64,000 nucleotides of DNA, taken from the NCBI RefSeq assembly GCF_963921235.1, contig NC_086108.1:62186001-62250000 (forward strand), in the 5' to 3' direction. The notes beneath the pieces were generated by a model, which ran no database searches, had not been told where the DNA came from, and saw only the letters and a list, made by a program, of their open reading frames with translations. The DNA is from Mobula hypostoma. Its lineage: Eukaryota. Positions within the stretch are counted from its first letter, which is position 1; the number at the start of each line of letters is the position of its first letter. A program made the position numbers and the translations under genes. Shown piece by piece: positions 8,046-52,959 of this stretch.

Positions 8046-8293
8046 TAACAGCTGGGATGTTATGACTAGAGAGTTAAGGAAGAGACTAAAGAGTAGTCTC
8101 TGAATCACACCCAGTACCATATGCTAGTCAGCGCAGGAATAGGATGATAGTACAGATGAATGAATGGCTGAGGAAATGGTGCAGGGGGCGGGATTTCACA
8201 TTTCTGAATTATTGGTATCACTTCTGGGGATGTTATGACTTGTATAAACAGAATGAGTTACACTTGAACGCGAGCAGGACCAATATCCTCGTA

Positions 8294-8416
8294 ACATACA
8301 TCAAAGTTGCTGGTGAACGCAGCAGGCCAAGCAGCATCTATAGGAAGAGGCGCAGTCGACGTTTCAGGCCGAGACCCTTCGTCAGGACTAACTGAAGGAA
8401 GAGTGAGTAAGGGATA
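8294..8416 (-). mobile_element. Penelope-like pLTR-only insertion carrying a hammerhead ribozyme, 13-bp TSD
   Basis: Flanked by CAATATCCT(C/T)GTA at 8281-8293 and 8417-8429. Same sequence family as the ends of the Penelope copies at 21093 and 26263. Confidence 0.85.
8354..8389 (-). ncRNA. Minimal type-I hammerhead ribozyme motif (Penelope-associated)
   Basis: Minus strand reads AGTC-CTGACGA-AGGGTCTCGGCCT-GAAA-C-GTC-GACT: stem I (AGTC/GACT), CUGANGA box, stem II hairpin, GAAA box, palindromic ACGT stem III, and GUC cleavage triplet. Confidence 0.8.
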
Positions 8417-9167
8417 CAATATCCTTGTAGGCAGGTTTGCAAGGGCTGTTACGGGGTTTAAACTAGGTTGGCAGGGAAATGGGAACCAGTGATAGGGCTG
8501 AGATGAGGCAGTGGTTTACAAGTCGATGCAGTGAGTAATAAGACGCTGAGGAAGGACAGGCAGATGAAAGGGCAAAATTGCAGTAGGGTGAATTGGAGTA
8601 TAACATAGAAGCAAAATTGAAAAGGGTGATGAACACAGAACTGACAAGTGTTATATTTGAATGCATATAGTATGCAGAATAAGGTAGATGATCTTGTAGT
8701 GCAGTTAGAGATTGGCAGGTATGACATTTTAGGCATCACAGAGTCGTAGCTGAAAGAAGATCATAGTTGGGAGCTTAACATCCAAGGATACACCTTGTAT
8801 TAAAGGCAGAGGGGGGTGGGGTGCCTCTGTTGGTATAAAAAGAAATGTTTTTTTACAGAGCAGCTTGTTGTTGAGCCCACTGGGGAAAGACAATTCTGGA
8901 CTAAATGTTGTCTAATGAACCAGATTTGTTTATGGAGCTTAAGGTAAATGAATCCTTAGTATTCATAATATAACAGAATTCACCCTGCAGTTTGGAGAGG
9001 CAGAAGATCAGACAGATGTATCTGCATTGCAATGGAGTAAAGGAAATTACAGGGACGTGACAGAACAGCTGGCCAAAGAGGATTGAAAGGAGACACCAGC
9101 AGAGATGATGGTAGAATAGCAATGGCTGGAATTTCTGGGGGCTATTTGGAAGGTGCAGGATAGATAC

Positions 9168-14806: not shown

Positions 14807-16975
14807 ACCATAAGACCATAAGATACAGGAGCAGAATTAGCCATTTGGCCCATGGAGTCTGCTCCGCCATTTCATCATGGCTGATCGATTTTTCCTCTCA
14901 GCCCCAATCTCCTGCCTTCTCCCAGTATCCCTTTGTGCCCTGACCAGTCAAGAATCTATTAACCTCTGCCTTAAATATATACAAAGACTTGGCCTCCACA
15001 GTTGTCTGTGTCAAAGAATTCCGGTTTCACCACTCTCTGGCTAAAGAAATTCCTCATCTCCATTCTAAGATGACAATCCTCTATTCTAAGGCTGTTTCCT
15101 CTGGTCTTAAGCTCTCCCACCATAGGAAACATCCTCTCCACATCCAATCTATCAAGGCATTTCACCATTTTATAGGTTTCAATGAGGACATCCCTCATTC
15201 TTCTGAATTCGAATGAATACAGACCTAGAGCCATCAAACACTCTTCATATGAGAATCTGTTTAATCCTGGAATCATTTTGGTGAACCTCCTTTGAACCCT
15301 TTCCAGTTTCCGCACATCCTTTCTAAAATATGGGGCCCAAAACTGCTGACAATACTCCGAGTGATGCCTCCCCAGTGCTTTATAAAGTCTCAACATTACA
15401 CCCTCACTTTTATATTCGGGTCCACTTGAAATGAATACTAACATTGCATTTGTCTTTCTCACCACAGACTCAACCTGCAAATTAACCTTTAGGGAATCCC
15501 ACACAATGTATTTTCTCTCCATTTAAAGAATAGTCAACACTTTCATTTCTTCGACCAAAGTGCATGACCATACACTTCCCAACACTGTATTCCATCTGCC
15601 ATTTCTTTGCCCATTCTCCTAATCTAAGTCCTTCTGTAGCCTCTCTACTTCCTCAAAACTATCTGCCCCTCCATCTATCTTTATATCGTCTGCAAACTTT
15701 ACAATAAAGCCATCAATTCCATCATCCAAATCATTGACATTTACCGTAAAAATTATCAGTTCCAACACAGACTTCTGCGGAGCACCACTAGTCACCAGCA
15801 GCCAACCAGAAAAGATTCTCTTTATTTCCACTCTTTGCCTCCTGTCAATCATCCACTGTTTTAACCATGCTAGAATATTTCCCACAATACCATGGGCTCG
15901 TAGCTTGTGAAGCAGCCTCATGTGTGGCACCTTGTCATAGGCCTTCTAAAAATCCAAGTACACAATATCAACCAGTTCTCCTTTGTCTATCCCGTTTGTT
16001 ATTTTGACAAAGAATTCCAACAGATAAGTTAGGCAACCATGCTGACTACGGCCTATTTTATCATAGGCCTCCAAGTACCCTGAGACGACATGCTTAGTAA
16101 TTGACTCCAAGATCTTCCCAACCACTGAAGTCAAACTAACTGGTCTATAGTTTCCTCTCTTCTGCCTCTCTCCCTTCTTGAAGAGTGGAGTGGCATTTGC
16201 AATTTTACAGTCTTCCACAACCATTCCAGAATCTAGTGATTCTTGAAAGAGCATTACTGCTGCTTCCACAATCTCTTCAGCCAGCTCTTTCAGAACCCTG
16301 GGATGTACACTATCTGGTCCAGGTGACTTATCTACTTTCAGTTTCTGAAGAACCATCTCTCTGGTTATGGTAACATCACACACTTCATGATCCCTGACAC
16401 CTGGAACTTCCACCACACAGCTATGTCTTCCACAGTGAAGACTGATGCAAAATATTTATTCAGTTCATCTGCCATTTTGTTGTCCCCCATTACTACCTCT
16501 CCAGCATATTTTCCAGTGGTCTGATATCCACTCTCACCTCTCTTTTACACTTTATGTATCTTAAAAAAACTTCTGGTATTCCCCTTTATTATTATTGGCT
16601 AGCTTACTTTCATATTCCATCTTTACCTTCTTAATGACCTTCTTAAAACCATTGGTTTTTAAAAGCTTCCCAATCCTCTAACTTTGTATTAATTTTTGCT
16701 CTATTATACGCCATCTCTTTGGCTTTTATGTTGGCTTTGACTTTTCGTTAGCTATGGTTGTGTATTCTTTTCTTTAGAATACTTCTTCCTCTTTGGGATG
16801 TATATATTCTGTGCCTTCCAAATTGCTTACAGAAATTCAGCCATTGCTGCTTTGTCGTCATCCTTGCCAGTGTTCTTTTCCAATCAATTCTGGCCAACTC
16901 CTCTCTCGTGCCTCTGTAATTCCCTTTACTCCACTGTAATACTGATACATCTGACTTTAGCTTCTCCGATATTTT
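14807..16975 (-). mobile_element. CR1 LINE (ORF2 RT fragments plus 3'UTR)
   Basis: ORFs 14971-15522, 15619-15930, 15946-16416 and 16748-16996 contain KSPGPD, NYRPVSLTS, VTSGAPQ.SVL and KFADD. Ends in an accataagaccataag tail. Confidence 0.92.
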
Positions 16976-33340: not shown

Positions 33341-33801
33341 TTATAAATCTTCATCTGAAGAATAGCAAGATAATCCCAGAATCCTAGAGGTTTTTGTCTG
33401 TGAGATAGACACCAAGGAATTATCCCTGATCTCTATAGTTTGTATTTGTTCTTCCTCTTTGTCCAACTCTTTTATGGTACCATGGGAAGAGGAGGCTTGT
33501 AAATTTGGTAGATGAGACAAAAGAATTTCAGTCAAATGGTGTGACGGCTCTCCCAATGAGTTTTTGGAAGTTAAGTGCATAGAAAATCTTGGTGGAAGCC
33601 GATCAGAGTTAAAAGTTAGAGGTTGGTCCTGAAAATCAGGGTTAACTACAGAACAGTCATAGATAATGCCATCTGAAATATGTGGGCTGAGGTGGCTCCT
33701 TTTACTGCCTTCATCAGAATCTTCAATGTCATATTTGTGAGACGCAACTTCTGCTTCAATTAATTGAGGCATGCATGGTCGTTTCAAACTGTGCAAAGAA
33801 G
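33341..33801 (-). CDS. ISY1-like protein coding exon 5 (last; low-complexity C-terminus)
   Basis: tttttttttcatatgcag|CT TCT TTG CAC, in frame with ORF 33341..33796, ending ILGLSCYSSDEDL*. Total CDS is 828 nt = 275 aa. Confidence 0.85.
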
Positions 33802-34571
33802 CTGCATATGAAAAAAAAACAATTTAGAAATGAGAACACTGGCGCTAATAATCATGAATACCAGAAACAGTAAACACCACCATAAAGTTTAAAATTTTCA
33901 GAGCATGATAAAAAAAATTGCGTGTTAAAATAAGCCATCTAGATTTTCTGCCAAAGTAAATATTAATTTAATTCAATCATTCCAAATAACATTATGGAAT
34001 GTGGAATTTTCTGATCAAGTTGCTAGAAAAATATACAATATGAAATTTTTGAATAAATCTAAGTGAAAGGCTAAAGCTTAATGAAGGATACCATTATTTG
34101 TCAGATGAAGAACTGTATAAATAAATATTTACAAAATGAAGTTTTTAAAGGTTCGGCATGAAAATGCGTTTGTCAGAGACTATGCACAGAAAAGTGCTTT
34201 GAAGACACAGTAACATGGCACAGATGAAATTAGCCAGGTCCATCCTGCACAAAATGATCATTAGCAATTAGAGGCTGCCAGTTAATTATGTGAAAGGCAG
34301 GAAATAGATTTCCAAAAATTAAATGGCACTTTCATAGTAAGATTCAGTGATCTTATTAAGCTTAGTCAAGGAAAGATAATTTATCCTTTGCTGAATGTAG
34401 TTCCTGTTTTGCTTCTTTTGTTAACATTATCTCTTACAAATACCTCATGACATTTAACATATTAAAATGCTCCTCCTGTATTATACAGAGGACACAGAAG
34501 TTAAACAATGAATGTAGTAAAATTCTGATAACCCATTATCTAACTTTTTCTCAAGTATTTAGTTTTGATAC

Positions 34572-34755
34572 CTTGTTGGTTGATATCGGGTACTCTTTTG
34601 CGTGTGTAAGCACGGGGTTTCCAAGGATGCTCTTTGTGGGAAGGATCTAAGCTACGGAGTTTCCACAAGAAACACCGATACTCTTTCTGAAGCTCTTCAA
34701 TGTGATCCTGGAATTCCTTGATTTTCCGTTCTGAGTAATGGGATAGCTGTGATTG
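34572..34755 (-). CDS. ISY1-like protein coding exon 4
   Basis: ccttttcag|CAA...CAAG|gtatca, 184 nt, reads QSQLSHYSERKIKEFQDHIEELQKEYRCFLWKLRSLDPSHKEHPWKPRAYTRKRVPDINQQ, a helical segment like ISY1 '[28 protein letters not shown]'. Confidence 0.88.
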
Positions 34756-35076
34756 CTGAAAAGGAGTGAGAGCATGTCTTCTTATCGCAAATTTTGTTGA
34801 CACTTCAGTTTCTGATCAAAAACAAGCTTAGACATGAAGAATGTGGGTAAATGGAATAATTATTTAAAAACAAAAACACTACAGATGCTGTAAATCTAAG
34901 CCAATAAAGGAAAATGCTGAAAATAGATCAGACATTCTTTAGACAGATGTGTGATTAAAACGTACCATTAAAAAACCTTTACAAAAGAAACTCTTTATAT
35001 ACTTCAAATTGCTTTCACACATTTTCTTTCTCTCTTTAAATTTTATTAACTTGGACTAATAAATGTTGTGCTTCAC

Positions 35077-36855
35077 CATAAGAAATAGGAGCAGAATGAG
35101 GCCATTTGGCCCATCAAGTCTGCTCCACCATTTCATCATGGCTGATCCATTTTTCCTCCCAGCCAATCTTCTGCCTTCTCCCTATATACCTTCATGCCCT
35201 GAACAGTCAAGAATCTATCAGCCACCGCCTTAAATATACTCAATGACTTGACCTCCACAGCCGCTTCTGGCAAAGAATTTCCATAGATTTATGAATCTCT
35301 GGCTAAAGATATGCATCCTGATCTCCATTATAAAAGGACGCTCCACTATTTTAAGCTTGTGTCCTCTGGTCTTTGACTCTCCCACAACAGGAAACATCCT
35401 CTCCATATCCACTTTATCAAGGCCTTTCAACATACGATGGGTTCCAATTAGCTCACCCCTCATTCTTCTAAATTCTAGTGAATACAGGCCCGGAGCAATC
35501 AAGCACTCTTCATATAGCAAGTCATTCAATCCTGGAATCATTTTCATGAAACATAGAAACATAGAAAATAGGTGCAGGAGTAGGCCATTCGGCCCTTCGA
35601 GCCTGCACCACCATTTATTATGATCATGGCTGATCATCCAACTCAGAACCCCGCCCCAGCCTTCCCTCCATACCCCCTGACCCCTGTAGCCACAAGGGCC
35701 ATATCTAACTCCCTCTTAAACATAGCCAATGAACTGGCCTCAACAGTTTCCTGTGGCAGAGAATTCCACAGATTTACCACTCTCTGTGTGAAGAAGTTTA
35801 TCCTAATCTCGGTCCTAAAAGGCTTCCCCTCTATCCTCAAACTGTGACCCCTCGTTCTGGACTTCCCCAACATCGGGAACAATCTTCCTGCATCTAGCCT
35901 GTCCAATCCCTTTAGGATCTTATACGTTTCAATCAGATCCCCCCTCAATCTTCTAAATTCCAACGAGTACAAGCCCAGTTCATCCAGTCTTTCTTCATAT
36001 GAAAGTCCTGCCATCCCAGGAATCAATCTGGTGAACCTTCTTTGTACTCCCTCCCTTAGTGAACATGAACCCTTTCCAGTGTCTGCAAATCCATTATAAG
36101 ATAAAGGCAGAAATCTGCTGACAATACTCCAAGTGAGGCATCACCAGTGCTTTATAAAGTCTCAAAATTACATCCTTGCTTTGATATTCTAGTCCTCTTC
36201 AAATGAATGCTAACATCGTATTTGCCTTCCTTATCACAGATCCAAGCTGCAAATTAACCTTTAGGGAATCCTGCTCAAGGGCTCCCAAGTCCCCTGGCAC
36301 CTCAGTTTTTTGTATTTTCTCTCTCCATTTAGAAAATAGTCAACCCTCTCATTTCTTCCACCAAAGTGCATTACCATACAGCTCCCAACACTACATTCCA
36401 TCTGCCATTTCTTTACCCATTCTCCTAATCTGTCTTTCCGCAGGTTCTACCTCCTCAAAACTACCTGCCCCTCCACCTATCTTCATATCATCTGCAAACT
36501 TTGCAACAAAGCCATCAATTCCATGTTCCAAATCATTGACATATAACATAAAAAGAAACGGTCCCAACACTGACCCCTGTGGAACACCACTAGTCACCAG
36601 CAATCAATCAGAAAAGGCTCCCTTTATTCCCACTCTTTGCCTCCTGCCAATCAGCCACTGTCTTATCCATGCCGGAATCTTTTCTGTAATTCCATGGGCT
36701 CACAGCTCATTAAAGCAGCCTCACATGTGGCATCTGGTCAAAAGCCTTCTGAAAATCCAAGTACACAACACCAACCAATTCTCCTTTGTCTGTCCCACTT
36801 GTCATTTCTTCAAAGAATTCCAACAGATTTGTCAGGTAAAATTTTCCCTTGAGGA
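35077..36855 (-). mobile_element. CR1 LINE with a younger CR1 3' end (~35549-36052) nested inside
   Basis: ORFs 35230-35637, 35643-36026 (intact, MIPGMAGLSYEERL...) and 36391-36603 ([18 protein letters not shown]). A second tail, aaacatagaaacatagaaa, lies at ~35549. Confidence 0.9.
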
Positions 36856-36864
36856 ATTAATGAT

Positions 36865-38351
36865 CTAAATTAATTACAAATATAATTTTTTGAAATAATT
36901 GATTGCATAAGTAATCACCCCTTCAAGTCAGTAATCAGTAGATGCACCTTTGGCAGCAATTACAGCCTTGAGTCTGTGTGGAAAGGTCTCTATCAGTTTT
37001 GCACATCTGGACATTGCAATTTTTCACATTCTTCTTTACAAACCTGCTCAAACTCTGTCAGATTGCGTGGGAATCATGAGTGAACAGCATTTTTCAAGTC
37101 CAGCCACGAACTCTCATTTAGATTGAGGTCTGGACTCTGACTTGGCCATTCCAAGACATCAATGTTGCTGTTTTTAAAGCCATTCCTGTGTAGCTTTGGC
37201 TTTATGCTTGTGATCATTGTCTTGCTGGAAAACAAAACAAACTCCCAAGTTGCAGTTCACTTGCAGAATACATCAGGTTTTTCAAGGATTTCCCTGAATT
37301 TTCCTGCATTCATTTTACCCACTACCTTCACAAGCCTTCGAGGGCCTGCTACAGTGAAGCATCCCCACAGCATGACGCCGCCACCACCACGATTCACGGT
37401 AGAGATGGTGTATTTTTGATGACGTGCAGTGTTTGGCTTTCACCAAACACAGTGTTTAGTCAGATGGCCAAAAAGCTCAATTTTGGTTTCATCAGACCAT
37501 AGAACCTACTTCTAGCTGACTTCAGAGTCTCCCACATGCCTTCGAGCAAACTCTACCCAAGATTTCATGGGAGTGTTTATTCAGCAATGGCTTTCTCTTT
37601 GCCACTCTCCTATAAAGCTGTGACTGGCGAAGCATCCAAGCAACAGTTGTTCTATGTGCAGTCTCTGTATCTCAGCATCTCAGCGACTGAAGCTTGTAAC
37701 TTCTCCATAGGTCTCTTGGTGGCCTCCCTCACTCGTCCCTTTCTTGCATGGTCACTCAGTTTGAGATCAGCCTGCTCTAGGCTTATTTACAGCTGTGCTA
37801 TATTCTTTCCATTTCCTGATGATTGACTTAACTAGACTGCAAGAGAAATTCAGTGACTTGGAAATTTTCTTGTATCTAGCTCCTGACTTGTGCTTTTCAA
37901 AATCTTTTCATGGAGTTGCTTGGAGTGCTCTCTTGTCTTTGGGGTGTAGTTTTTGCTAGGATACAGACTCACCAGCAGTTAGACTTTCCACCTACAGGTA
38001 TATTTTTATGACGATCAATTGAAACACGTTGACTGCACACAGGTCTCCAAAAACAGATCTCCATTTAACTAATTGTGTGACTTCTAAAATCAATTGGCTG
38101 CACCAGTGAAGATTTGATGTGTCATATTAAAGGGGGTGAATACTTATGTAATCAATTATTTTATGTTTTATATTTGTAATTAATTCACATCACCGTGTAG
38201 AGATTTGTTTTAATTTTGTCATGGAAGAGTCTTTTTCTGTTGATCAGCATCAAAAAAAAAGCCAAATTAAATCTACTGTGATTCAATTTTGTAAAACAAT
38301 AAGACATGAAAACTTCCAAGGGGGTCTGGTGAATACTTTTTACAGGCACTG
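36865..38351 (-). mobile_element. Tc1-family transposon, degenerate, with a truncated left TIR
   Basis: Right end GAATACTTTTTACAGGCACTG|TA. Inner TIR repeats GCATAAGTAATCACCCC / GGGGTGAATACTTATGT. Minus-strand WSDETKIELFG, GGVMLWGCF and QSPDLNL remnants. Confidence 0.85.
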
Positions 38352-38752
38352 TATAAATACTTGTATGACAGGGACTGATTAGGGATAGTCAGCATGGATT
38401 TGTGCGTGGTAGGTCGTGTCTAATCAATTTTATAGAGTTTTTTAAGGAAGTTTATGAAGTCAAGGCAGTGGATGTTGTTTACAAGGGCTTTGACAAGGCT
38501 TATTTTTAAATCTGGCAGGAGCAAAGGAATTTGGGAATGGTGAGGGTGGTGCACCTGAAGAAGGGTGTGGGACAGGTGGCTAAGTGTCAACGGTAGGAGG
38601 AGGTGTGGGTGTAGACGCACCCAGCACTCAGACACCGGGCAAGGTCACTTGATCCCAATCAATAGGCTTACTGATATGTAGAGAATGTCTCTGTGGTGCT
38701 TCCCACTTTCTCCCCTCACGAGTAGGATTATACATGGGTCTTTTCACAACCA

Positions 38753-38850
38753 TTGATTCCCCTCTCCCTGCCCCATTCCCCTTTTCCCATGATTTCCCTC
38801 TTCCTGCCCCATTCCCCTTTTCCCATGATTTCCCTCTTCCTGCCCCCTTC
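38753..38850. repeat. ~36-bp tandem repeat (about 2.5 copies)
   Basis: Repeated unit TGATTtCCCTCTtCCTGCCCCATTCCCCTTTTCCCA. Confidence 0.8.
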
Positions 38851-39059
38851 CACTGTGCTCAATTATGATTTCATTCTCTTTGTCCCCTTCGCATGTTGCC
38901 CACAAGAGACAGATATCAGAATCAGGTTTATCATCACTCACACGTCATGAAATTTGTTTTTTTTGTGACAGCAGTACAGTGCAATACAAAACTACAGTAC
39001 CAAGCTAAAGCCTTAGGCACCCTATCTGTATGTACCCAAGACTTTTGCAAAGTACTGTA

Positions 39060-40445
39060 GGTCTTACACGATGAGCAGTAGGGCATTGAGGAGTGCAGTC
39101 GAACAGAGGGATCTGGGGATACAGTCATGATTCCTTGAAAGTGGCACAGGGTCATGATGAAAGCTTTTGAAATGAATCAGTGTATGGAGTTCAGGAGTTG
39201 GGATGTTATGTTGAAATTGTATAAGATGCTGGTGAGGCCTAAAATGGAGTACTGTGTCCAGTTTTGTTCACCTACCTACAGAAAAGATAAATAACATTGA
39301 GAGAGTGAAGAGAAAATTTGTGCTGGGACTTGAAGGCCAGAGTTATAGGGAAAGATTGAAGAAGTTAGGTCTTTATTCCTTAAAATGTAAAAGAATGAGG
39401 GGAGATTTGAAAGAGGTATACAAAATTATAAGATGTATAAATAAGGTTTTTCCACTTAGGATGGGTGAGACGAACTAAGGTTGAAAGGTGAAATATTTAA
39501 GTGGAACATGAGAGGGAACTTCTCTACTCAGAGGGTGGTGGGAACGTGGAATGAGTTGCCAGCACAAGTGGTGCATGCGGGGTCAATTTCAACATTTAAG
39601 AGAAATTTGAATAGATCCAAGGATGGTAGGGATAAGGAAGGCTGGTCCAGGTACAGATCCTGCTGTTTCTGGAGGACAGCGCGTAGATGCTCAGAGAAGC
39701 GATCTCCCAATCTACATTGGGTCTCACTGTCATACAGGAGGCTACACCAGAAGCACCCGATACAGGAGATGGCCCCACAGGTCAAGTGTCACCTCACCTG
39801 GAAGGACTGGTGGGGCCCTGAATGGTGAGGGAGGAGGTGTAGGAGCATGTGTGGCACTTGTTTCTGTTTGAAAGGATAAGTACCAGGAGGGAGATCAGTG
39901 GGGAGAATGAGAGGACAGGGGATGAACATCACATGAACATCAATTTTCCTGAAAAACCTGATCGCATGAACATCGATTTCTCGAAAACCTGATGGCACAA
40001 ACATCAATTTCTCAAAGTTCTGGTAATTAACTACCCCCCTCCCCCCCTTCACCATTTCCCATTCCCTCTCTCACCTTATCTCCTCACCTGTCCATCATCT
40101 CATTCTGGTGCTCCTCCTGCTTCCCTTTCTTCCGTGGTCTTTTACCCTCTCCCCCTCCTCCAGCCCTGTACCTCTTTCACCAATCAACTTCCCAGCTCTT
40201 TACTTCACCCATCCCCCTCCTGGTTTCACCCATCACCTACCACCTTGTATTTCTTTCTCCCCTCCCCCCAACTTCTTACTCTGACCTCTCCCCTTCCTTT
40301 CCAGTCCTGAAGGGGAGAATACTGAATACTGAAACGTCGACTGTTTGCTTATTTCCATAGATGCTGCCTGGCCCGCTGAGTTCCTCCGCATTTTTGTGTG
40401 TTGCTTTGGATTTTTAGCATCTGCAGATTTTCTTGTGAGCTTACC
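39060..40445. mobile_element. CR1 3' fragment (+) followed by Penelope fragments in both orientations
   Basis: RMRGDLKEVYKII..RGNFSTQRVV (CR1), CRLGDRFSEHL (GIY-YIG region), and a pLTR with a degenerate hammerhead at ~40303-40342. Confidence 0.75.
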
Positions 40446-40853
40446 CTCCACTTCTTACTGCCTTAGGTTGCACATCAACTAATCGTACACAGCCGGGATG
40501 CAACATCCATGGTCGATCCTGAGCAATGGAGACCCCAGGAAGATCCGCCTACTAATTTTGTAAATTTTCAATTCATTCTTATCCAGAACTCTACAACACG
40601 AGTAGGATTATACATGGGTAAATAGGTTCAACAAAATATGACCCACTTCCTCGGCAAGTAAATGCAATGGCATCTTTAATTTAATTACTCCATAGCAAGA
40701 CAGAAATATTCAAGAATTGTGCAAATACAACTTTATATACTTCACACTGAAAAGATGAAAGGTGATTTTGCTCAGACTGGTTTTTTTTTCCGCCTGTAGT
40801 GAAATATATTAACTTGTCTGTGCAGCTTTTATTTTGGAAACTGAATTATTTAC

Positions 40854-40928
40854 CTGCAGGTAATACTCAATTTCAGACTTGATACTTGGAATCCATTTTT
40901 TCACATCAATGGCCGAATTCAATGAAGA
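40854..40928 (-). CDS. ISY1-like protein coding exon 3
   Basis: ttttatttgtag|TCT...CAG|gtaaat, 75 nt, reads SSLNSAIDVKKWIPSIKSEIEYYLQ (ISY1: ...AEKWRRQIIGEI...). Confidence 0.9.
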
Positions 40929-41134
40929 CTACAAATAAAAACAAAAATAATTCAAATTATAAAACATAAATACTTGAATTGAAGCTGCCATGTAATAATC
41001 ATTTCAAGATGTATGAAGGTACTTGGTTTTAGGGTAAAGATAAAATCATTGATTAGATTGCATTGACAATGTTTTTCTCAGTGAAGTGAAAATTACAAAG
41101 TCAAAGCAGTCAATTCAGACTAGATCAACAACAC

Positions 41135-41730
41135 ATCATGCCATTAGGATGGAGTCTACCCAGACAAAATACAAGGTATTGCTCCTCCAACCCGAGTGTG
41201 GCTCCATCATAACAGTAGAGGAGGCCATGGACTGGCATGTCGGAATTTGAAGAAGGATTAAAATGGGTGGCCACCAGGAAATCCCGCTTTTCTGGCAGAC
41301 TCTAGGTGCTCAGCGAAGCGGTCTCCCCATTTACTTTGTGTCTTAGCAATATACAGGAGACTATAATGGGAGGACCAGATACAGTAGATGACCCCAACAG
41401 ACTCGCAGGCGAAGTCTCGCATCACCTGGAAGGAATGTCTGGGGCCCTGAAAAGTAGTGAGGGAGGAGGCTACTGTAGTAATTTTGTACTGCACTGTACT
41501 GTTATCACAAAAAAAAACAAATTTCATGACATCTATCACCTACCACCTTGTAAATCTTCCTTCCTTCCCTCCTTCTTGCTCAAACTTCCCATCTTTTTTC
41601 CAGTCCTGATGAAGGGTCTCAACCTAAAATGTTGACTGTTTACTCTTTTCTCACAGATGCTGGTAGGCCCGCTGACTTCCTCCAGCATTGTGCATGTTGG
41701 TTAGATCTCCAGCATCTGCAGACTTTCTCG
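41135..41730. mobile_element. Penelope-like fragments
   Basis: FQGPRHSFQVMRDFACESVGVIYCIW...GDRFAEHL on the minus strand, then a plus-strand pLTR with CTGATGA..AAAA hammerhead variant at 41602-41637. Confidence 0.78.
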
Positions 41731-41906
41731 TTAATGTAAAATGCCATTTGGATGTAAGCTATACTCAAATGTAACACATATTCTTCCAGTTTGTATTTGG
41801 CCTCTCCATAGCAATGGAGAAGGCAAAGACACACAAATTGATGTGGGAGGGGGTAGGAGAGTTAAAATGACATGCTGCAGACTGAAAAATAGCTGTGCAT
41901 ACCCAC

Positions 41907-41947
41907 CAGTTTGGGTCGATTTTGATGGATCTCTCTTAGACGGCCCT
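41907..41947 (-). CDS. ISY1-like protein coding exon 2
   Basis: tttttttttgttcaatag|AG GGC CGT...CTG|gtgggt, 41 nt, reads (E)GRLREIHQNRPKL and restores the frame between exons 1 and 3. Confidence 0.88.
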
Positions 41948-42354
41948 CTATTGAACAAAAAAAAATACAGAGATGAAGGATGGTCAGATATGAATAAATT
42001 TTGGATGACAACATTTTGTAGTTAGAGAGTTAGGAAATGTAAAATTTTCAAAGTTTCTTCACAGAGCAATAGCAACAAAATATGACAAGGGGTCAAACTA
42101 TGCTACTAGGAATGACTAAAAGGTTATTCAAAGTGTAACATTTTAGAGGGGGATGAAGCAGAGGTTTGGAAATGGAATTCCAGACACTGGACCTCAAACA
42201 GCTAAAAGCACTGTTGCCGATAGTAAAAGTTATGGTTTCAGAATGCTAGAACCCAAAATAGAAAGACCAGATATCTCAAACAATTTTAAGGCCTGTGGCA
42301 GTTGAAAGGTTAAAAATAATGACCCCAGAACAGATAACTGTGTGTTAGACTGTT

Positions 42355-43060
42355 CAAAAACACCGGAGGAACTGAGGTCAGGCAGCATTTGTGAAAATGA
42401 ATAAATGGTTGACATTTCAGACTGAGACCCTTCATCAGGAAGGATGAAGAGGCCAGAGTAAGAAGGGGTAGGGAGAAGAGGAAAGAGAACAAGTTAGGCG
42501 ATAGGTGAACACAAGATATTCTGTAGATGTTGGAAATCCAAAGCAACACACACGAAACACTGGAGAAACTCAGCATGTCAGGCAGCTTCTCCGGAAATGA
42601 ACCAATGTTTCAGGCCGAGACCCTTCTTCAGAACTGAGAAGGAAGAGGAAAACACCAGAATAAAATGAGAGGAAGAAGGGCTAGTTAGAAGGTGATAGGT
42701 GGGTGAGAAAGGTAAAGGGCTGGGGAAAGATGAAAGAGGAGAGTGGACCATGAGAGAAAAGGAAAGAGGAGGGGCACCAGCAGGAGGCGATAGGCAGGGG
42801 AGGAGAAAAGATAAGAGGCCAGAGTAGGGAGTAGAAGGTTGTGTATGTGGGGAGGTGGGGGCAGGAGAATTACCAGTAATTGACGTTCATTCCATCAGGT
42901 TGGACACTACCTAGACGGAATATGAGGTGTTACTCCTACACCCTGAAAGCAGCCTCATTGTGACAAAAGAGGAGGCAACAGACTGACATGTCAAAATGGG
43001 AATAGATTTAAAATGGCTGGCCACCAGGAAATTCCACTTCTGGTTGATGCAGCAGAGGTC
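42355..43060 (-). mobile_element. Penelope-like element with a tandem partial pLTR
   Basis: Two successive pLTR heads, each with a hammerhead-like CTGA(T/A)GA..GAAA (~42407-42441 and ~42604-42635), then a purine-rich tract and the GIY-YIG 3' region. Confidence 0.75.
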
Positions 43061-44929
43061 CTCCACCTTTTGATTTTGAGAAACATTTGGAGGTTCCATA
43101 TGCAAGGTTGGTCAACTGTTTAAGTAGGTCCCTAGGAACGCAACAAAAAGGAGCATTTTTGAGAAGCTGTCAGCCACAATTATACTGTGAAGTAAGCATA
43201 ACTAGAAGTTAGACCATCATGAAATAAATGGAACAATGCTTCAAAATAACATTCTCTCATTCTCATTGAGGAGCTTCCTAGATTTGCTGGGTTTCAGGGT
43301 TAGAGAGATGAAAAAAAACAAACATAACAACAGTGTCATCTGATTGTGATAGGAAAAGAACCAATGAACACTAGAAACCTCAGGCAGACAGAGGAGTAAG
43401 TTGCTACTATAGTAACAGAAGATAACTAGAGGCCCATGTTACGTCAGTGTGGAGATATGGTCATAAGACTCACTTGGGGCAGCTTTTCAGCAGTCTCTAC
43501 CTGACTGGCCTTATATCAATAACTAGAATGCAACGGAACTGGTGAAATGGAAAATGAATGTTGTTGTGGAACACCAATAACCTGGATGCAACAGGCCAAA
43601 TGGGTTGGCCCTGATCTGGATTATAAATGTTGTATTATTTAAGTGGAGGAGAGAATAAGGCACAGGAAGAAATTGGTTCTAAGAAAACAGGATTTATCTT
43701 CTCATCAAATTTGGAACGACACTGAAACTGTAGCAAAAATCCAGAACCCGTTGGGCTCAATTTTGACAGTTCGCTTACATGACTTTCTATTCTCTGAATT
43801 GCAGACTCAGTGTGGGTCTGAAATTTAGAGAATAATTGGAAGCCGAAAGCCTGACTGAGAATGGTCTCATTGTGACCTGATGGCCAGCATTAACTTGAAA
43901 TCAAAGACAGAACTCTTCATCCATTTGTTGTGCAGTGTATGTAAGACAGCATCATGTGACGATGAAGAAATGTTATAGAAAAACCATGGCATAGTCCCTA
44001 TCATGAAAAAGTTGTGGAAAGATTTCTTATACAAATACTCCCTGAGACTGATCTGCACTCAACAGGACCATTCCTGATCTTCTCACTCAACACCTTTTCA
44101 TGCTATACCATCAAAGGGTGTTTGATATTTCCAAAGCACTTAGCACACAAGAACGTGTGAAATTAGCTGCAAAAGCTGGTCATTATGGCATTTTATATAG
44201 TGAGCTGTGATTGTGACAGCAATGCAGTGTGGATAACATATCACAAAACCCTGCCTTTCCCAGTTTTGTGCTGTCATGCCTGGAACCCAGTTGAGGGAAC
44301 TCCCAGATCAATGAAATGAATGGTTTGGTGGACAGCGAGCAACAAAGGCAATGTACAGCGGTTGCCCATGAGAACTGGTGTTGGGTGGCAAGAGCAGGCA
44401 CTCAATGCTGAGACACAGGGCTGCATCCTAGCCAATGTGGACCCCATTACTGGGAACCGGCAAAGGTGTTCTCACTGTTGACAGATCACCTACCCAGTCT
44501 TCCCCCACCCCAGTCAAATCCCTTAGTCTCTCTTTTTACAACACGTTGGACATGACGGACACTGCTGTCTCCCCATAGTTACCTGGCTGCAAGACTCACC
44601 CCATCCTGAGATTTCTGCAGCTAGACCTTTAAGAACTTGCTCCTTGTTCCAGTCCTAAATAGTAAACACCTATTTCTGAGATGAATGACTACTTAGATTC
44701 ATCAGCTAGGGAAAACCCCGCATCTACCTTGCCAATATTTAAGAATCACTACTACTAAATATATATACACATACACACACGTCTTTATTACGTTTTGCAT
44801 TGCTACCGCAAAGACAACAAATTTCACGACATATACCGATGATATTAAGCAGATTTTGATTGCATAAGCAGAACCATTTAAAATGAGTCCTGCAGTTATC
44901 CTACTGGGGAAATAAGCCACACTGCATTC

Positions 44930-45490
44930 AATTCATTCCGGGCGGCGGAGCACTGACGGTGGCTACAATCCGGGGGTTCTCCTCACACAGACAAACTCAC
45001 TGGTGTTTCCAAGCACGCTTATAGACAATGAAACGTGTATTCACGTAGGTTTCCTACCCTCCTTCTCTCTCTGCAGCCACAGTCGATTCAGTTTCCCCAG
45101 CTGCTTCTCCTCATTGCGAGCCATCGTCGCGTTTACAAAGGCGTTCCTCCCCCACCGGGTCTTCCAGTTTCCCGAAAGCCTCTTGGGCAGAACGGAGAGG
45201 GGGTAAAAACCACAACGGTAACATGTGACGGCGATCAAAAATTTGACTGTGACGTTGGGCCGAGTCTGCGGAGAAGGGGAGGGGGCGGGATCTGTGTTGG
45301 GCGGACAATGACGCACATCATGTCACGTGGGAGGAGGAGCGGTTACTGGGCGGACTATGACGCACGTCGTGTCACGTGGGAGGAGGCGCGGGCGCTGGGC
45401 GGACTATGACGTGAGGTCATGTCTCGTAGGAGGGAGCGGGGGTGTTTGTTGGGTGGACGGTGGATTAAGATTGACGAAGGCTCGGCTGTT
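44930..45490. promoter_or_regulatory. CpG-island promoter of the ISY1-like gene, containing a 3x49-bp tandem repeat of GC-box/CRE half-site/E-box
   Basis: High CpG density. Repeat units start at 45299, 45348 and 45397, consensus GGGCGGAC(A/T)ATGACG...TGTCACGTGGGAGG. Confidence 0.75.
45058..45124 (-). CDS. ISY1-like uncharacterised protein, coding exon 1 (from memory resembles zebrafish si:dkey-86e18.1; unverified)
   Basis: gcgacgATGG Kozak context, MARNEEKQLGKLNRLWLQREKE, donor G|gtagga (phase 1). Resembles the ISY1 N-terminus MARNAEKAMTALARF. Sits in a CpG island. Confidence 0.9.
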
Positions 45491-49726: not shown

Positions 49727-51976
49727 TTATCTAGTTAACATCATTTTTTTCCTCAGCAGTATTGCTATCTGTTGGTGGTTATCTGTGTCTCTGCTTTCTG
49801 CAACTTGAAGAGGGGTCTTCTTTAAGCTATTTGTAGAGTGAAACTTGGGTTTTTCACCATCAGACCAGTGAATTAATTTTCGGGCAGTACCAACGTTGCC
49901 TGATTTGCAAGCACAATGCAGTGGTGTGTCTTTGGCATTGTCTAAGGCATTAATAGAAGCTCCACTGACCAACAATAATTCTACCAATCCCTCGTGGCTA
50001 TGTTCTGCTGCAAGATGTAATGGTGTTTTGCGCCAAATATTCTTAGCATCAATGTTTTTATTTTTCCCAGCCAATAAAAGTGCTTTGACAACAAAGCTAT
50101 GACTTTTGCTGGCTGCATAATGCATTGGCGTATTCCCGTCCATATCCTTTGCAGCAAATCTGGCCCTTCTGCTTAACATCATTGATACAAAGTCCAAATG
50201 ACCTTCGTTAGCAGCCAGATGGAGTGGGGTTTTCTTCTCCTTATTTACTGTATTAGGATCAGCGTGGCTTGACAGAAGCAGCTCTGCGATGGAGGCATCT
50301 CCAACTATAGCTGCCATGTGCAAGGGTGTTCTCATCGAACTGTCTTTAGCATTCACATCAGCCTTGTTCTGAAGAAGACACTCCACTGTTTCTCGGTTAC
50401 CTCTTTGCGAAGCAATGTGCAAGGGTGTAATTGCTTCTTTAGCAATGGCATTGACCTTTGAACCTGCTCTTATTAAAGCTTCTATCATCGGTGGCTGATT
50501 GTGAAAAGATGCAAAGTGCAGAGGTGTTTGATCACTGCAGCCGATAATATTTACATCCATCCCCTCATCAATCAGCAGCTTTGCAACTGAAAGGGACCCA
50601 GTCTCAGCAGCAAGGTGCAGTGCACTGTTCATATTTGGGGTCCTTTCATTTAAATGAGCTCCTTTAGTTATCAGGACCTTGACAGATTCTGTATGCCCAA
50701 GTTCTGCTGCCAACAGCAAAGGGGTATATTGCAGTTCATTTTTGGTGTTGATATCGATGCCCCTTTCAATCAGAACACCCACAGTTCTGTGTTGATTTTT
50801 CTGAACTGCTTTAAAGAGTGCATTGACTAGAACATTAGGGCTAATCCCAGTGGCATACTCCAAGATCAGTTTAATCAGGGATTGGTTATTACTAGTTAAT
50901 GCTCCATCAATCATATCAACATCAACTTTGGCTCCTGCCTCGAGCAGTACCTTCACAGTACTGAGATGTCCCAGGGAGACAGCGTGAATTAGTGGGGTCC
51001 TGTTGTTTTCATCCTTAATGTCTGCAGCAGCTCCACACTTGAGAAGAATTTCTGCAATTTTACTTTCATCTCTGAGAGCAGCCATGTGTAAAAAAGATTT
51101 CTTTCTTTTATAATTTTTAGCTTCTTCTTTCAACATCAGTTTCACAACAGAGAAAAAATTGTTCTGGGAAGCTAAGTGTAGAGGAGTTTTAGATTCTATA
51201 TCCAAAGCATAGCTGTGTGCTGCAGCTTGAAGAAGGACTTTGGCTGCTGCTGTGTGCCCTTTCTCTGCAGCCCGGTGAAGAGGTGATTGCCCCTTGTTAT
51301 CCTTTACCTCTAGCTTTGCTCCTTTATTCAATAAATATTCAATGATCTTAACATGTCCATGGGCAGCTGCAATGTGCAACAGGGTTTCATGACAAGCATT
51401 TATATCATTAATGTCACTGTGTCCAATAGCTTTATCAAGACTGTATAGATCTCCTGATGCTACAATCTGAAAGAGCTGAGCTAGCTCATTGTGTACTGGT
51501 TGAGTTTGAACAGCCGTCTGTAATTTCTGCTGTGGCTCCTTATTAGTTGCCACATTTTGCACTGGCTTACCTACATTTTTTGAAGTATTCTTAGGGATTT
51601 CATCCTTATCTCTCTCCAAAAGATAACCCACAAGCTGTCTCTTGGCATCCCCAAAACTGCTTGACACATTACTGACATAGCTTCTGATGTAATTGTAGAG
51701 AGCTGGTTCAACATGCTTGAGGCAAGGATAGAAGAACAGTCTGCAGGCTCTCTCACCACAAGAAACCAACATGTCTAGGACTCTGGTGTTCATTTCCTCA
51801 CGTGTCCTGTAATTCAACACTGCAATTCTTTTATCTGGTGAAATGACACGATTCTCAATCAACCAGTCTAGAAGATCATCAGTGTGGATAATCCCTGCTG
51901 CTAGTTCTTTTTTCTTGCTCTGTAGAACTTCAATAGCATATGGATTTGTAAAAATACCTGTGCCATGTAGGGGCAT
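49727..51976 (-). CDS. caiap: CARD- and ankyrin-repeat-containing inflammasome adaptor protein (CAIAP), 749 aa, single coding exon
   Basis: Uninterrupted ORF with its first ATG (gcaacaATG) at 51976. N-terminal CARD-like helical domain (NPYAIEVLQSKKKEL...LLDWLIENRVI...VLDMLVSCGERACRLF), a linker, then ~16-17 ankyrin repeats (TLLH/SPLH/TPLH...AA). This is the CAIAP architecture. Confidence 0.9.
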   Translation of the reverse strand: MPLHGTGIFTNPYAIEVLQSKKKELAAGIIHTDDLLDWLIENRVISPDKRIAVLNYRTREEMNTRVLDMLVSCGERACRLFFYPCLKHVEPALYNYIRSYVSNVSSSFGDAKRQLVGYLLERDKDEIPKNTSKNVGKPVQNVATNKEPQQKLQTAVQTQPVHNELAQLFQIVASGDLYSLDKAIGHSDINDINACHETLLHIAAAHGHVKIIEYLLNKGAKLEVKDNKGQSPLHRAAEKGHTAAAKVLLQAAAHSYALDIESKTPLHLASQNNFFSVVKLMLKEEAKNYKRKKSFLHMAALRDESKIAEILLKCGAAADIKDENNRTPLIHAVSLGHLSTVKVLLEAGAKVDVDMIDGALTSNNQSLIKLILEYATGISPNVLVNALFKAVQKNQHRTVGVLIERGIDINTKNELQYTPLLLAAELGHTESVKVLITKGAHLNERTPNMNSALHLAAETGSLSVAKLLIDEGMDVNIIGCSDQTPLHFASFHNQPPMIEALIRAGSKVNAIAKEAITPLHIASQRGNRETVECLLQNKADVNAKDSSMRTPLHMAAIVGDASIAELLLSSHADPNTVNKEKKTPLHLAANEGHLDFVSMMLSRRARFAAKDMDGNTPMHYAASKSHSFVVKALLLAGKNKNIDAKNIWRKTPLHLAAEHSHEGLVELLLVSGASINALDNAKDTPLHCACKSGNVGTARKLIHWSDGEKPKFHSTNSLKKTPLQVAESRDTDNHQQIAILLRKKMMLTR

Positions 51977-52959
51977 TGTTGCAGATTGACATGAATCCAA
52001 ATTAATCAATGAATTGAACAGGATCAGAAGAGTTTGTCTTTCTAGCAATTGTCAAATCTTAAAGCAATGAAGCTCAACACATTTTGTAAACAGTGTAGTC
52101 CATGGCTAAATGCCTGGCTTATCAAGCAGTTAAAATAGTGTCCTCAGAGCCTCATGCGCACAGTAAGTCCACTAATTGCATAAGATGAGTTCTTGAATGA
52201 GTCCTTAGTTGTTCCATAGTGCCATGGCAACCAGGTTAATAACTTTGTCCCAAAACAACAATAATATTTAAAATGTTGGAAAACAGGTTATTTGATCTTC
52301 AGAAGAAATTCTTGAGGAAGTCCTTGATATCTTGAGGATAAAACTGTCAAAGAAAGTCAGTTTGCTTTTCTGTGACCCAAGCAGTTGTGTTTGCCATCCA
52401 GTAATTGTTCTGTTAGTGGGCTGTTAGAAGTGACGTGAAAATCTGCAACCTAGCTACTGTTGCCTGGAGTCCATTAGTTCTTTGTGTTGAGAACCTAATG
52501 CGAAACAACAATATACAACCAATGATAAGAGGGAAATCCTTCAAACTGCTTGCAGAGAATTCACCCAAAACGTTTTGAGTTAAATCCACAGTTGTACAGT
52601 TGGCTTGCTTTGGGATCAACTGTTGGTTCATTTTATTCACTGATAAAAATGGTCTACAATGGTATATCCTTTTTGCAAGCTCTCCAAATTTGTTTGTACT
52701 GAGTATGTAAGTTAACTGCCTATTTAAGCAGCCTACACATTAGCAACTTTGAATTGTATAATTTTGAACAATATAATACAATGTTTCTAAAGTAGGAAGT
52801 TATATATTGAACCAATAGCTGAAGATCTTCTTTCGTGTGAAGCTTGAGGTCATTAATTATAACATTGAGAAAACTGACCATGGATGAAAGCTGATTGAAA
52901 ACTCAAAATCTGGGGAAGTTAGCAGGCCAGGTTACAAATATGACGTTTACAGGAGCATT

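What the first reader, a model, noticed from the sequence alone, without database searches (positions are those of the whole stretch)
33341..45124. Complete uncharacterised ISY1-like (step-1 splicing factor-like) gene, fragmented in the ORF track, between caiap and MYSM1
Seen: five exons with canonical GT-AG sites join in frame into a 275-aa protein beginning MARNEEKQLGKLNRLWLQREKEEGRLREIHQNRPKLSSLNSAIDVKKWIPSIKSEIEYYLQQSQLSHYSERKIKEFQDHIEELQKEYRCFLWKLRSLDP. Known: the MARNxEK start, the RPxL...KW...I..EI segment and the following helical hairpin are ISY1 hallmarks, and the extreme N-terminus of ISY1 stabilises the branch helix in the spliceosomal C complex. Seen: after ~120 aa there is no ISY1 'Y.YFGAA' or later conserved region, only a Ser/acidic, probably disordered tail ending LGLSCYSSDEDL. 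Inference: this is a divergent paralog, not the ISY1 ortholog. It keeps the active-site-contacting N-terminus and could be an alternative or competitive branching factor, possibly for a subset of introns such as U12-type. I recall no such gene between MYSM1 and JUN in human, which would suggest lineage-specific loss.
Basis: partly seen in the sequence, partly recalled or inferred. Interest (0 to 1): 0.78.

Follow-up and report, generated by a model that had tools for sequence, protein, structure and literature searches.

The report
ISY1-like gene with clamp domain only
This is a real, spliced and transcribed ray gene from an old animal-wide family that keeps only the front part of the splicing factor ISY1 (the part that holds the intron branch in the spliceosome), has never been studied, and appears to be missing from reptiles, birds and mammals.

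Summary
Five GT-AG exons on the minus strand (45124-33341) join in frame into a 275-aa protein. Transcript contigs from three studies carry the e1-e2 and e2-e3 joints and read from exon 3 into exon 4. The protein is 100% identical to RefSeq XP_062921038.1, 'uncharacterized protein si:dkey-86e18.1' of Mobula hypostoma, so the gene is already annotated but unstudied (0 papers found).

Pfam Isy1 matches only profile positions 1-98 of 253 (42 bits). A family profile finds only ISY1 chains in the PDB. The AlphaFold model gives an N-terminal helix plus a confident helical hairpin that superposes on ISY1 chains from spliceosome structures, followed by a disordered tail.

The family is single-copy and occurs in sponge, placozoan, jellyfish, molluscs, brachiopod, priapulid, an insect, amphioxus and all anamniote vertebrates. 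No amniote appeared, even with a tetrapod-biased profile. Gene order is JUN-caiap-ISY1L-MYSM1. The tail carries conserved short motifs, above all a C-terminal LGLxCYSSS-acidic motif.

Best reading: an ancient ISY1 paralog that keeps the branch-helix clamp but has lost ISY1's NTC/U2 tether. It is probably an alternative or competing branching-stage factor. That function is inferred, and the U12 idea has no support. The scan had not reported this gene before. A note places a canonical ISY1 elsewhere in this genome.

The parts
45058..45124 (-). Exon 1, coding part: ATG at 45124 with A at -3 and G at +4; residues 1-22 (MARNEEK... helix) plus 1 nt; donor GT at 45057-45056
   Evidence: joint 41947/45058 in contigs of X1, X2, X19; Pfam Isy1 positions 1-22 on this exon alone, E 0.037
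45125..45263 (-). 5' UTR, at least to 45263
   Evidence: X1 contig record 1 runs without a gap from 45058 to 45263
45111..45224 (-). Upstream ORF in the 5' UTR (ATG at 45224, 37 codons, out of frame) that overlaps the main start codon
   Evidence: read from the sequence and ORF list; not tested for function
41907..41947 (-). Exon 2, 41 nt, residues 23-36 (ends ...NRPKL)
   Evidence: both flanking joints seen in contigs
40854..40928 (-). Exon 3, 75 nt, residues 37-61 (KKWIPSIK..., first helix of the hairpin). Skipped in frame in the annotated isoform X2 of two related rays
   Evidence: 250-aa isoforms of Mobula birostris and Hemitrygon akajei lack exactly these 25 residues
34572..34755 (-). Exon 4, 184 nt, residues 62-122: second hairpin helix and the conserved LDPSxKxxPWxPRxYxKR segment
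   Evidence: loose ends at 40854 in X2 and X19 read into its first 30 bases; 102 clusters at 50% identity match this exon
33341..33801 (-). Exon 5, coding part with stop (33341-33343), residues 123-275: disordered Ser/acidic tail
33611..33631 (-). Codons for QDQPLTF (residues 180-186). The short motif QDxPLxF is conserved in most family members, vertebrate and invertebrate
33503..33526 (-). Codons for LLSHLPNL (residues 215-222), a motif conserved in vertebrates; lies in the only predicted tail helix (210-218)
33344..33382 (-). Codons for ILGLSCYSSDEDL (residues 263-275). The C-terminal motif LGLx(C)YSSS+acidic has an invariant Tyr and is present from sponge to ray

Best explanation
The locus is the Mobula hypostoma ortholog of zebrafish si:dkey-86e18.1, called ISY1L here. 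It is a single-copy, vertically inherited, animal-wide gene.

Shown:
- The gene is transcribed and spliced as modelled.
- Residues 1-98 are homologous to the N-terminal domain of the spliceosomal step-1 factor ISY1. The model is a MARNxEK helix plus a helical hairpin.
- 11 of the 18 family-invariant residues are also present in human ISY1.
- The remaining two thirds of ISY1 are absent.
- In their place is a conserved segment (LDPS..PW.PR.Y.KR) and a disordered tail with short conserved motifs, ending in LGLxCYSSS+acidic.

Inferred:
- ISY1L would therefore dock in the same pocket of the B*/C spliceosome, but be recruited or regulated through its own tail motifs (probably phospho-dependent) rather than through the NTC.
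- On this reading it acts as an alternative or competing branching-stage factor that tunes branching efficiency or fidelity.
- It appears to have been lost in amniotes.
For: Gene model and RNA.

ISY1 N-terminal homology:
- Pfam Isy1 scores 42.2 bits against a cut-off of 25, covering positions 1-98 of 253. Eight of ten other members tested pass the cut-off over the same span.
- A profile of 56 members finds only ISY1 chains in the whole PDB: fungal 9l5s_CV at E 3e-6, human 6ff7_w at E 3.7e-5.
- In the AF2 model the hairpin has pLDDT above 90.
- It superposes on ISY1 chains of yeast, human and thermophile spliceosomes at rmsd 1.0-1.6 A over 56-68 residues, Z 8-9.5.
- 18 of the best 30 Swiss-Prot AFDB matches are ISY1, most of them aligned 1-97 to 1-98.

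Constraint:
- The N-terminal 115 residues are 70-77% identical between ray and bony vertebrates, and 43-56% identical to invertebrates including sponge. The tail is 4-24% identical apart from the motifs.
- The family tree follows the species tree.

Role of canonical ISY1 domains: PMC8022279 and PMC5959246.
Against: - There is no direct evidence that ISY1L binds a spliceosome.
- The fold is a simple helical hairpin, and unrelated hairpins score similar Z values, so the structural match alone is weak.
- Canonical ISY1 also has roles outside catalysis. A microRNA link in C. elegans is reported in the abstract of PMC5903861. Membership of the XAB2/Aquarius complex is stated in the methods of PMC10208982.
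- Loss in amniotes, and apparently in most insects and in nematodes, shows the function is dispensable or replaceable.
- I could not place canonical ISY1 sequences in a tree.
Confidence: 0.55

Rival explanations
1. ISY1L uses the ISY1-type domain outside splicing catalysis. Candidates are microRNA precursor processing, or an XAB2/Aquarius-type complex in transcription-coupled repair or R-loop handling, with the tail motifs docking it to those partners.
For: Canonical ISY1 is linked to microRNA regulation in C. elegans (abstract of PMC5903861). It is a subunit of the SYF1/XAB2-ISY1-CCDC16-PPIE-Aquarius complex (PMC10208982). In the human Bact structure only the ISY1 hairpin is modelled (chain 6ff7_w, 56 residues), and the ISY1L hairpin matches it at rmsd 1.0 A. 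The hairpin may therefore be a protein-docking element that ISY1L retains.
Against: The most strictly conserved part of ISY1L is the extreme N-terminus MARNxEK. In ISY1 this part engages the branch helix together with the N-termini of Cwc25 and Yju2 (PMC8022279). No data link ISY1L to any of these other processes.
Confidence: 0.25
2. It is an untethered decoy. The clamp domain occupies the ISY1 pocket without linking to the NTC and so slows or blocks branching, acting as a negative regulator for certain tissues or stages.
For: Same domain evidence as the main explanation. The Syf1/Lea1-binding part of ISY1 is absent: the Pfam match stops at 98 of 253 and the tail is disordered. An overlapping upstream ORF and an in-frame exon-3-skipping isoform hint at regulated dosage.
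Against: This is a sub-case of the main explanation and cannot be told apart from it with sequence data. The tail motifs are conserved across animals, which argues for specific docking rather than a free competitor.
Confidence: 0.15
3. It is simply the canonical ISY1 of this genome, mis-modelled or truncated.
For: NCBI names two shark orthologs 'pre-mRNA-splicing factor ISY1 homolog'.
Against: The complete 275-aa ORF ends in a stop and is identical to RefSeq. The transcript contigs agree with the model. The Pfam match covers only positions 1-98 of 253. More than 250 orthologs share the same non-ISY1 tail and C-terminal motif. Databases keep it as a gene separate from isy1 (the si:dkey-86e18.1 names). 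A scan note reports another ISY1 gene elsewhere in this genome (unchecked).
Confidence: 0.02
4. It is a specialised factor of the minor (U12-type) spliceosome.
For: None beyond the general ISY1 resemblance.
Against: No amniote ortholog was found, although amniotes keep U12 splicing (textbook knowledge). The gene's own introns are ordinary GT-AG without U12 donor or branch consensus.
Confidence: 0.03

Closest known systems
ISY1 / Isy1p / Ntc30 / Cwf12 (Pfam PF06246), spliceosomal branching (step-1) factor of the NTC and of the human intron-binding complex
   Same: The N-terminal ~98 residues: the MARNxEK start, L12, R14, the RP motif, KW, EI, and the two-helix hairpin. Sequence and predicted fold both match.
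   Different: There is no match to Pfam positions 99-253. That region includes the central part and the C-terminal helices that bind Syf1 and Lea1 in yeast (PMC8022279). ISY1L has its own invariant residues (N13, P50, Y68, W106, Y111), its own extension (LDPS..PW.PR.Y.KR), and a disordered tail with different motifs.
si:dkey-86e18.1 (zebrafish gene name used by NCBI and UniProt for this orthogroup)
   Same: The window protein is 100% identical to the Mobula hypostoma entry of that name. Length, domain, C-terminal motif, five-exon structure and gene neighbourhood all agree.
   Different: Nothing differs: the window gene is this gene. The orthogroup has no described function, and no paper in the searched library mentions it.
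Other step-specific factors that reach the active site with an N-terminal element and are tethered by a separate part (Yju2, Cwc25)
   Same: Two-part logic: a conserved N-terminal element for the branch helix, plus a separate recruiting part (PMC8022279).
   Different: No sequence relation. This is an analogy of design only and was not tested here.

Membership tests
Canonical ISY1 (full-length Pfam PF06246 architecture) | N-terminal domain: MARNxEK helix plus helical hairpin (profile positions ~1-98) | tested here: met
   42.2 bits, E 9.2e-11, residues 1-98 to profile positions 1-98. Human ISY1 residues 1-92 aligned. Fold matches.
   There is a single Pfam stretch ending at position 98 of 253. 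No FGAA-type motif occurs in the first 106 family proteins fetched. The profile-to-PDB alignment beyond residue 97 is noise.
Canonical ISY1 (full-length Pfam PF06246 architecture) | C-terminal helices that bind Syf1/XAB2 and bridge to U2 Lea1 (PMC8022279) | tested here: inconclusive
   No sequence match, and the tail is predicted disordered apart from one short helix at 210-218. Binding itself cannot be tested with these tools.
Canonical ISY1 (full-length Pfam PF06246 architecture) | Physical presence in B*/C spliceosomes, NTC or the intron-binding complex | not testable with these tools
   Needs purification, crosslinking or cryo-EM.
si:dkey-86e18.1 orthogroup (ISY1L) | Family-invariant N-terminal residues (M1 A2 R3 N4 E6 K7 L12 N13 R14 R33 P34 W48 P50 Y68 L97 W106 Y111) | tested here: met
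   All are present in the window protein, which is the first row of alignment A1 (56 sequences, sponge to ray).
si:dkey-86e18.1 orthogroup (ISY1L) | C-terminal LGLx(C)YSSS+acidic motif and internal QDxPLxF motif | tested here: met
   ILGLSCYSSDEDL at 263-275 and QDQPLTF at 180-186. A loose pattern for the C-terminal motif matched 117 of the 135 full-length members then in hand.
si:dkey-86e18.1 orthogroup (ISY1L) | Conserved neighbourhood and exon structure | tested here: met
   Neighbourhood: CARD/ANK gene, then ISY1L, then MYSM1 in Mobula and Xenopus; JUN, then CARD/ANK gene, then ISY1L in Danionella. Exon structure: exon 1 ends after residue 22 in all three, and exon 3 is residues 37-61 in Xenopus as here.
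si:dkey-86e18.1 orthogroup (ISY1L) | Clade separate from canonical ISY1 in a joint tree | not tested
Only the family-internal tree was built.

The most novel reading that the evidence does not exclude
Most animals, though not amniotes, possess a second, so far unnoticed branching-stage factor. It plugs the ISY1 clamp into the catalytic spliceosome but is recruited through a phospho-regulated acidic C-terminal motif instead of the NTC. This would define an alternative, regulatable state of the step-1 spliceosome that controls branch-site choice or proofreading for a subset of introns.
Probability: 0.3. Interest if true: 0.8.

Novelty: new variant of a known kind. Interest (0 to 1): 0.55.

Why it matters
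The protein parts list of the catalytic spliceosome is considered essentially complete, but it was drawn up in yeast, human, fly and worm. Human (as an amniote) lacks this family, and no yeast, fly or worm member appeared in the searches. An ancient, strongly constrained protein that keeps exactly the part of ISY1 that engages the intron branch helix, yet lacks ISY1's tether, would be a natural separation-of-function variant. Studying it in zebrafish or Xenopus could show how occupancy of the branch-helix clamp site tunes branching and Prp16-dependent proofreading. It could also show what amniotes changed when they lost it. If it turns out not to be spliceosomal, it would reveal a second use of the ISY1 domain.

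Tried and rejected
1. Tree with canonical ISY1. All three word-indexed searches and the exhaustive search with exon 4 returned family members only, and I did not type sequences in.

2. Partner for the C-terminal motif. A 22-position profile of the motif against all PDB sequences gave no hit at E up to 10, which is uninformative for so short a profile. From memory, similar hydrophobic-x-x-Tyr-acidic/Ser stretches occur in other spliceosome-associated proteins (PRCC, SAP30BP, ZNF830), and the motif also resembles phospho-dependent SUMO-interaction motifs. None of this was tested.

3. Weak Pfam hits are all below their cut-offs and rejected as coiled-coil or low-complexity noise: KIF21A_4th 23 bits, Gal_mutarotas_3 18 bits, DUF1977 14 bits.

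4. Foldseek against the PDB gave no match at E <= 0.001. Only the ranking, with ISY1 chains on top, and the low rmsd are informative. VIA Z scores of 8-9.5 are shared by unrelated hairpins.

5. Rfam scan of the whole window at gathering score: nothing.

The 6.1-kb intron 3 could not be spanned either. It is supported only by the loose ends at 40854.

7. dN/dS was not computed. DNA of close orthologs was not delivered because the sample file was too large.

9. No literature: 'dkey-86e18.1' gave 0 papers, and 'ISY1-like' and similar terms gave only unrelated uses of the Pfam name.


Full report
**The observation**

On the minus strand, five exons (45124-45058, 41947-41907, 40928-40854, 34755-34572, 33801-33341) are each bounded by AG/GT and preceded by pyrimidine tracts. 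The start ATG has A at -3 and G at +4.

I laid public contigs on 40700-45400. One contig in each of runs X1, X2 and X19 (two studies) carries both joints, 40928/41907 and 41947/45058. X3 (a third study) carries the first. The skipped ends read CT..AC on the plus strand, which is GT..AG on the gene's strand. In X2 and X19 the part of the contig that runs off at 40854 reads into the first 30 bases of exon 4. The 5' UTR reaches at least 45263. The runs are only guessed to be RNA, but intron-less joined contigs are what a transcript gives.

It rests on three things:
- identity of the model to RefSeq;
- the same 11,784-base gene span in the public annotation;
- an intron at the same place in Xenopus and Danionella.

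**Identity**

The assembled protein is 100% identical over all 275 residues to P0113. P0113 is XP_062921038.1, 'uncharacterized protein si:dkey-86e18.1' of Mobula hypostoma; the M. birostris protein differs at two residues. The gene is therefore already annotated.

The public annotation shows a CARD+ankyrin gene upstream. A Myb/SWIRM/JAB gene (MYSM1) starts 645 bases after the stop, on the same strand. The CARD+ankyrin ORF is at 49727-52048 in the window.

**Relation to ISY1**

- Pfam Isy1 matches residues 1-98 to profile positions 1-98 of 253, at 42.2 bits against a cut-off of 25.
- Exon 1 alone already hits profile positions 1-22.
- Eight of ten other family members tested pass the cut-off over the same span.
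- Against all PDB sequences the single protein finds human ISY1 residues 1-92 (E 0.0075).
- A 56-member profile finds only ISY1 chains: fungal at E 3e-6, human at E 3.7e-5, aligned 1-95/97.
- AlphaFold2 with the family alignment gives helix 3-22 and a hairpin at 42-63/70-97 with pLDDT above 90. The rest is low confidence apart from a short helix at 210-218.
- Ten of the first 16 Foldseek PDB rows are ISY1 chains of yeast, human, C. elegans and thermophile spliceosomes or the Isy1-domain NMR structure. For the hairpin, rmsd is 1.0-1.6 A and VIA Z is 8-9.5.
- In Swiss-Prot AFDB, 18 of the best 30 matches are ISY1, most of them aligned 1-97 to 1-98.

Hairpins are common folds, and unrelated ones reach similar Z. 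The fold is therefore supporting evidence, and the sequence profiles carry the weight.

Nothing in the protein matches ISY1 beyond position 98, and none of the first 106 family proteins fetched has the FGAA-type segment.

**The family**

The exhaustive search with exon 4 found 102 clusters at 50% identity. Named members include:
- sharks, rays and chimaera, ray-finned fishes, coelacanth, lungfish and all three amphibian orders;
- amphioxus, many molluscs, Lingula, Priapulus and Thrips palmi;
- a jellyfish, the sponge Ephydatia and Trichoplax.

No amniote appeared in any list. A profile built only from tetrapod, lungfish and coelacanth members ranks cartilaginous fishes at 300+ bits, yet its best 120 rows (down to 248 bits) contain no reptile, bird or mammal. 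Given how many amniote proteomes are public, I read this as loss in the amniote stem. An unannotated remnant cannot be excluded.

A tree of 42 members recovers vertebrates, cartilaginous fishes, teleosts, amphibians and molluscs as clades. This fits a single-copy, vertically inherited gene.

Gene order is CARD/ANK gene, then ISY1L, then MYSM1 in Mobula and Xenopus. In Danionella it is JUN, then CARD/ANK gene, then ISY1L.

Intron positions are shared. Exon 1 ends after residue 22 in ray, frog and fish, and exon 3 is residues 37-61 in frog as in ray.

**Conservation pattern**

Across 56 members from sponge to ray, the invariant residues are M1 A2 R3 N4 E6 K7 L12 N13 R14 R33 P34 W48 P50 Y68 L97 W106 Y111 Y269. 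Eleven of these (M1 A2 R3 N4 E6 K7 L12 R14 R33 P34 W48) are also in human ISY1 in the printed alignments.

Residues 1-115 are 70-77% identical between ray and bony vertebrates, and 43-56% identical to invertebrates. Residues 116-260 are 4-24% identical. Islands in the tail are conserved:
- QDxPLxF (180-186);
- LLSxLPNL (215-222, vertebrates);
- a TP[LIV]L stretch (invertebrate alignment);
- the C-terminal LGLx(C)YSSS followed by acidic residues, with an invariant Tyr.

The serine/acidic run looks like a casein-kinase-2-type phosphorylation site. That is inference.

**Mechanism**

What is established for canonical Isy1:
- Two C-terminal helices bind the N-terminus of Syf1, and the last one bridges to U2 Lea1, so the domain is tethered near its site (PMC8022279).
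- In human, ISY1 is co-expressed with SYF1/XAB2, CCDC16 and PPIE as partners of Aquarius (PMC10208982).

ISY1L keeps the clamp, including the extreme N-terminus, which is its most conserved part. It lacks the tether. The most economical reading is that it docks in the same pocket and is brought there, or kept away, by its own tail motifs. That would make it an alternative or competing branching-stage factor. I put this at about 0.55.

Rivals:
- A role of the same domain outside catalysis, such as microRNA processing or XAB2/Aquarius-type complexes: 0.25.
- A pure decoy, which is a sub-case of the main reading.
- The canonical ISY1 mis-modelled: contradicted.
- A U12-specific factor: no support, since amniotes keep U12 introns without this gene and the gene's own introns are ordinary.

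**Paralog or ortholog**

The missing two thirds of the Pfam profile, the distinct invariant residues and tail, and the separate gene identity in databases all argue for a paralog. An unchecked scan note reports an ISY1 gene on another piece of this genome (s1-142364).

**Novelty and score**

The gene is annotated and carries a precomputed Pfam Isy1 hit in public tables. No paper in the searched library mentions it.

As far as I can see, the following are not described anywhere:
- the animal-wide range;
- the clamp-only architecture;
- the conserved tail motifs;
- the apparent amniote loss.

I class it as a new variant of a known kind and score interest at 0.55. It is a good, testable lead in zebrafish or Xenopus, but its function is wholly inferred.

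The window has no N. Read laying was given 4,701 letters.

Noticed in passing
window 49727-52048 (-): A single 773-codon ORF with an N-terminal CARD-like start and many ankyrin repeats. The public annotation calls a 749-aa CARD+Ank product here. This is the caiap-like neighbour. A CARD and/or ankyrin gene sits beside ISY1L in Xenopus and Danionella too.
   Followed up: partly
window about 32700 and downstream (-): The MYSM1 gene (Myb/SWIRM/JAB, 864 aa in the annotation) starts only 645 bases after the ISY1L stop codon on the same strand. The ISY1L 3' UTR and the MYSM1 promoter must therefore be very close or overlap. The X2 contig length suggests a 3' UTR of about 430 nt.
   Followed up: partly
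window 45111-45224 (-): A 37-codon upstream ORF lies in the transcribed 5' UTR. It is out of frame and ends 13 nt past the main ATG, so it overlaps the start codon. It may regulate translation.
   Followed up: no
window 40854-40928 (-), exon 3: RefSeq isoforms X2 of Mobula birostris and Hemitrygon akajei (250 aa) skip exactly this 75-nt exon in frame. That removes the KKWIPSIK helix of the hairpin, including invariant W48 and P50. No such joint was visible in the stretch laid here.
   Followed up: partly
window 43130/45057 (-), intron 1: In run X3 (organism B, many single-base differences) a contig joins exon 1 to an acceptor near 43130 and continues to 42520. Other X3 contigs cover intron sequence. 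This could be an alternative exon, pre-mRNA or DNA in that run.
   Followed up: no
window 41171-41641 and 42427-42583 (introns 1-2); also 38934-39155 and 39528-39785: Intronic repeats with very high contig depth in all runs (up to thousands). Their ORFs carry a GIY-YIG-like endonuclease signature (GVIYCIW...YI..T...GDRF.EH), typical of Penelope-like retroelements. Other ORFs in the window look like reverse-transcriptase and Tc1/mariner transposase fragments (3250-4294, 14971-16416, 35230-36868).
   Followed up: no
window 8281-8429: A scan note (s1-143504) reports a hammerhead-bearing mini-retroposon in a MYSM1 intron. My Rfam scan of the whole window at gathering score found no family, hammerhead included.
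   Followed up: partly
database names of orthologs: Misleading names in public records: 'pre-mRNA-splicing factor ISY1 homolog' for two shark orthologs, 'OMA1 zinc metallopeptidase' (UniRef) for the Xenopus tropicalis cluster, and 'heparan sulfate glucosamine 3-O-sulfotransferase 1-like' for a sea slug member. There are also fusions with neighbouring genes (PIM2 kinase in Polypterus, a TNF domain in Gymnothorax).
   Followed up: no
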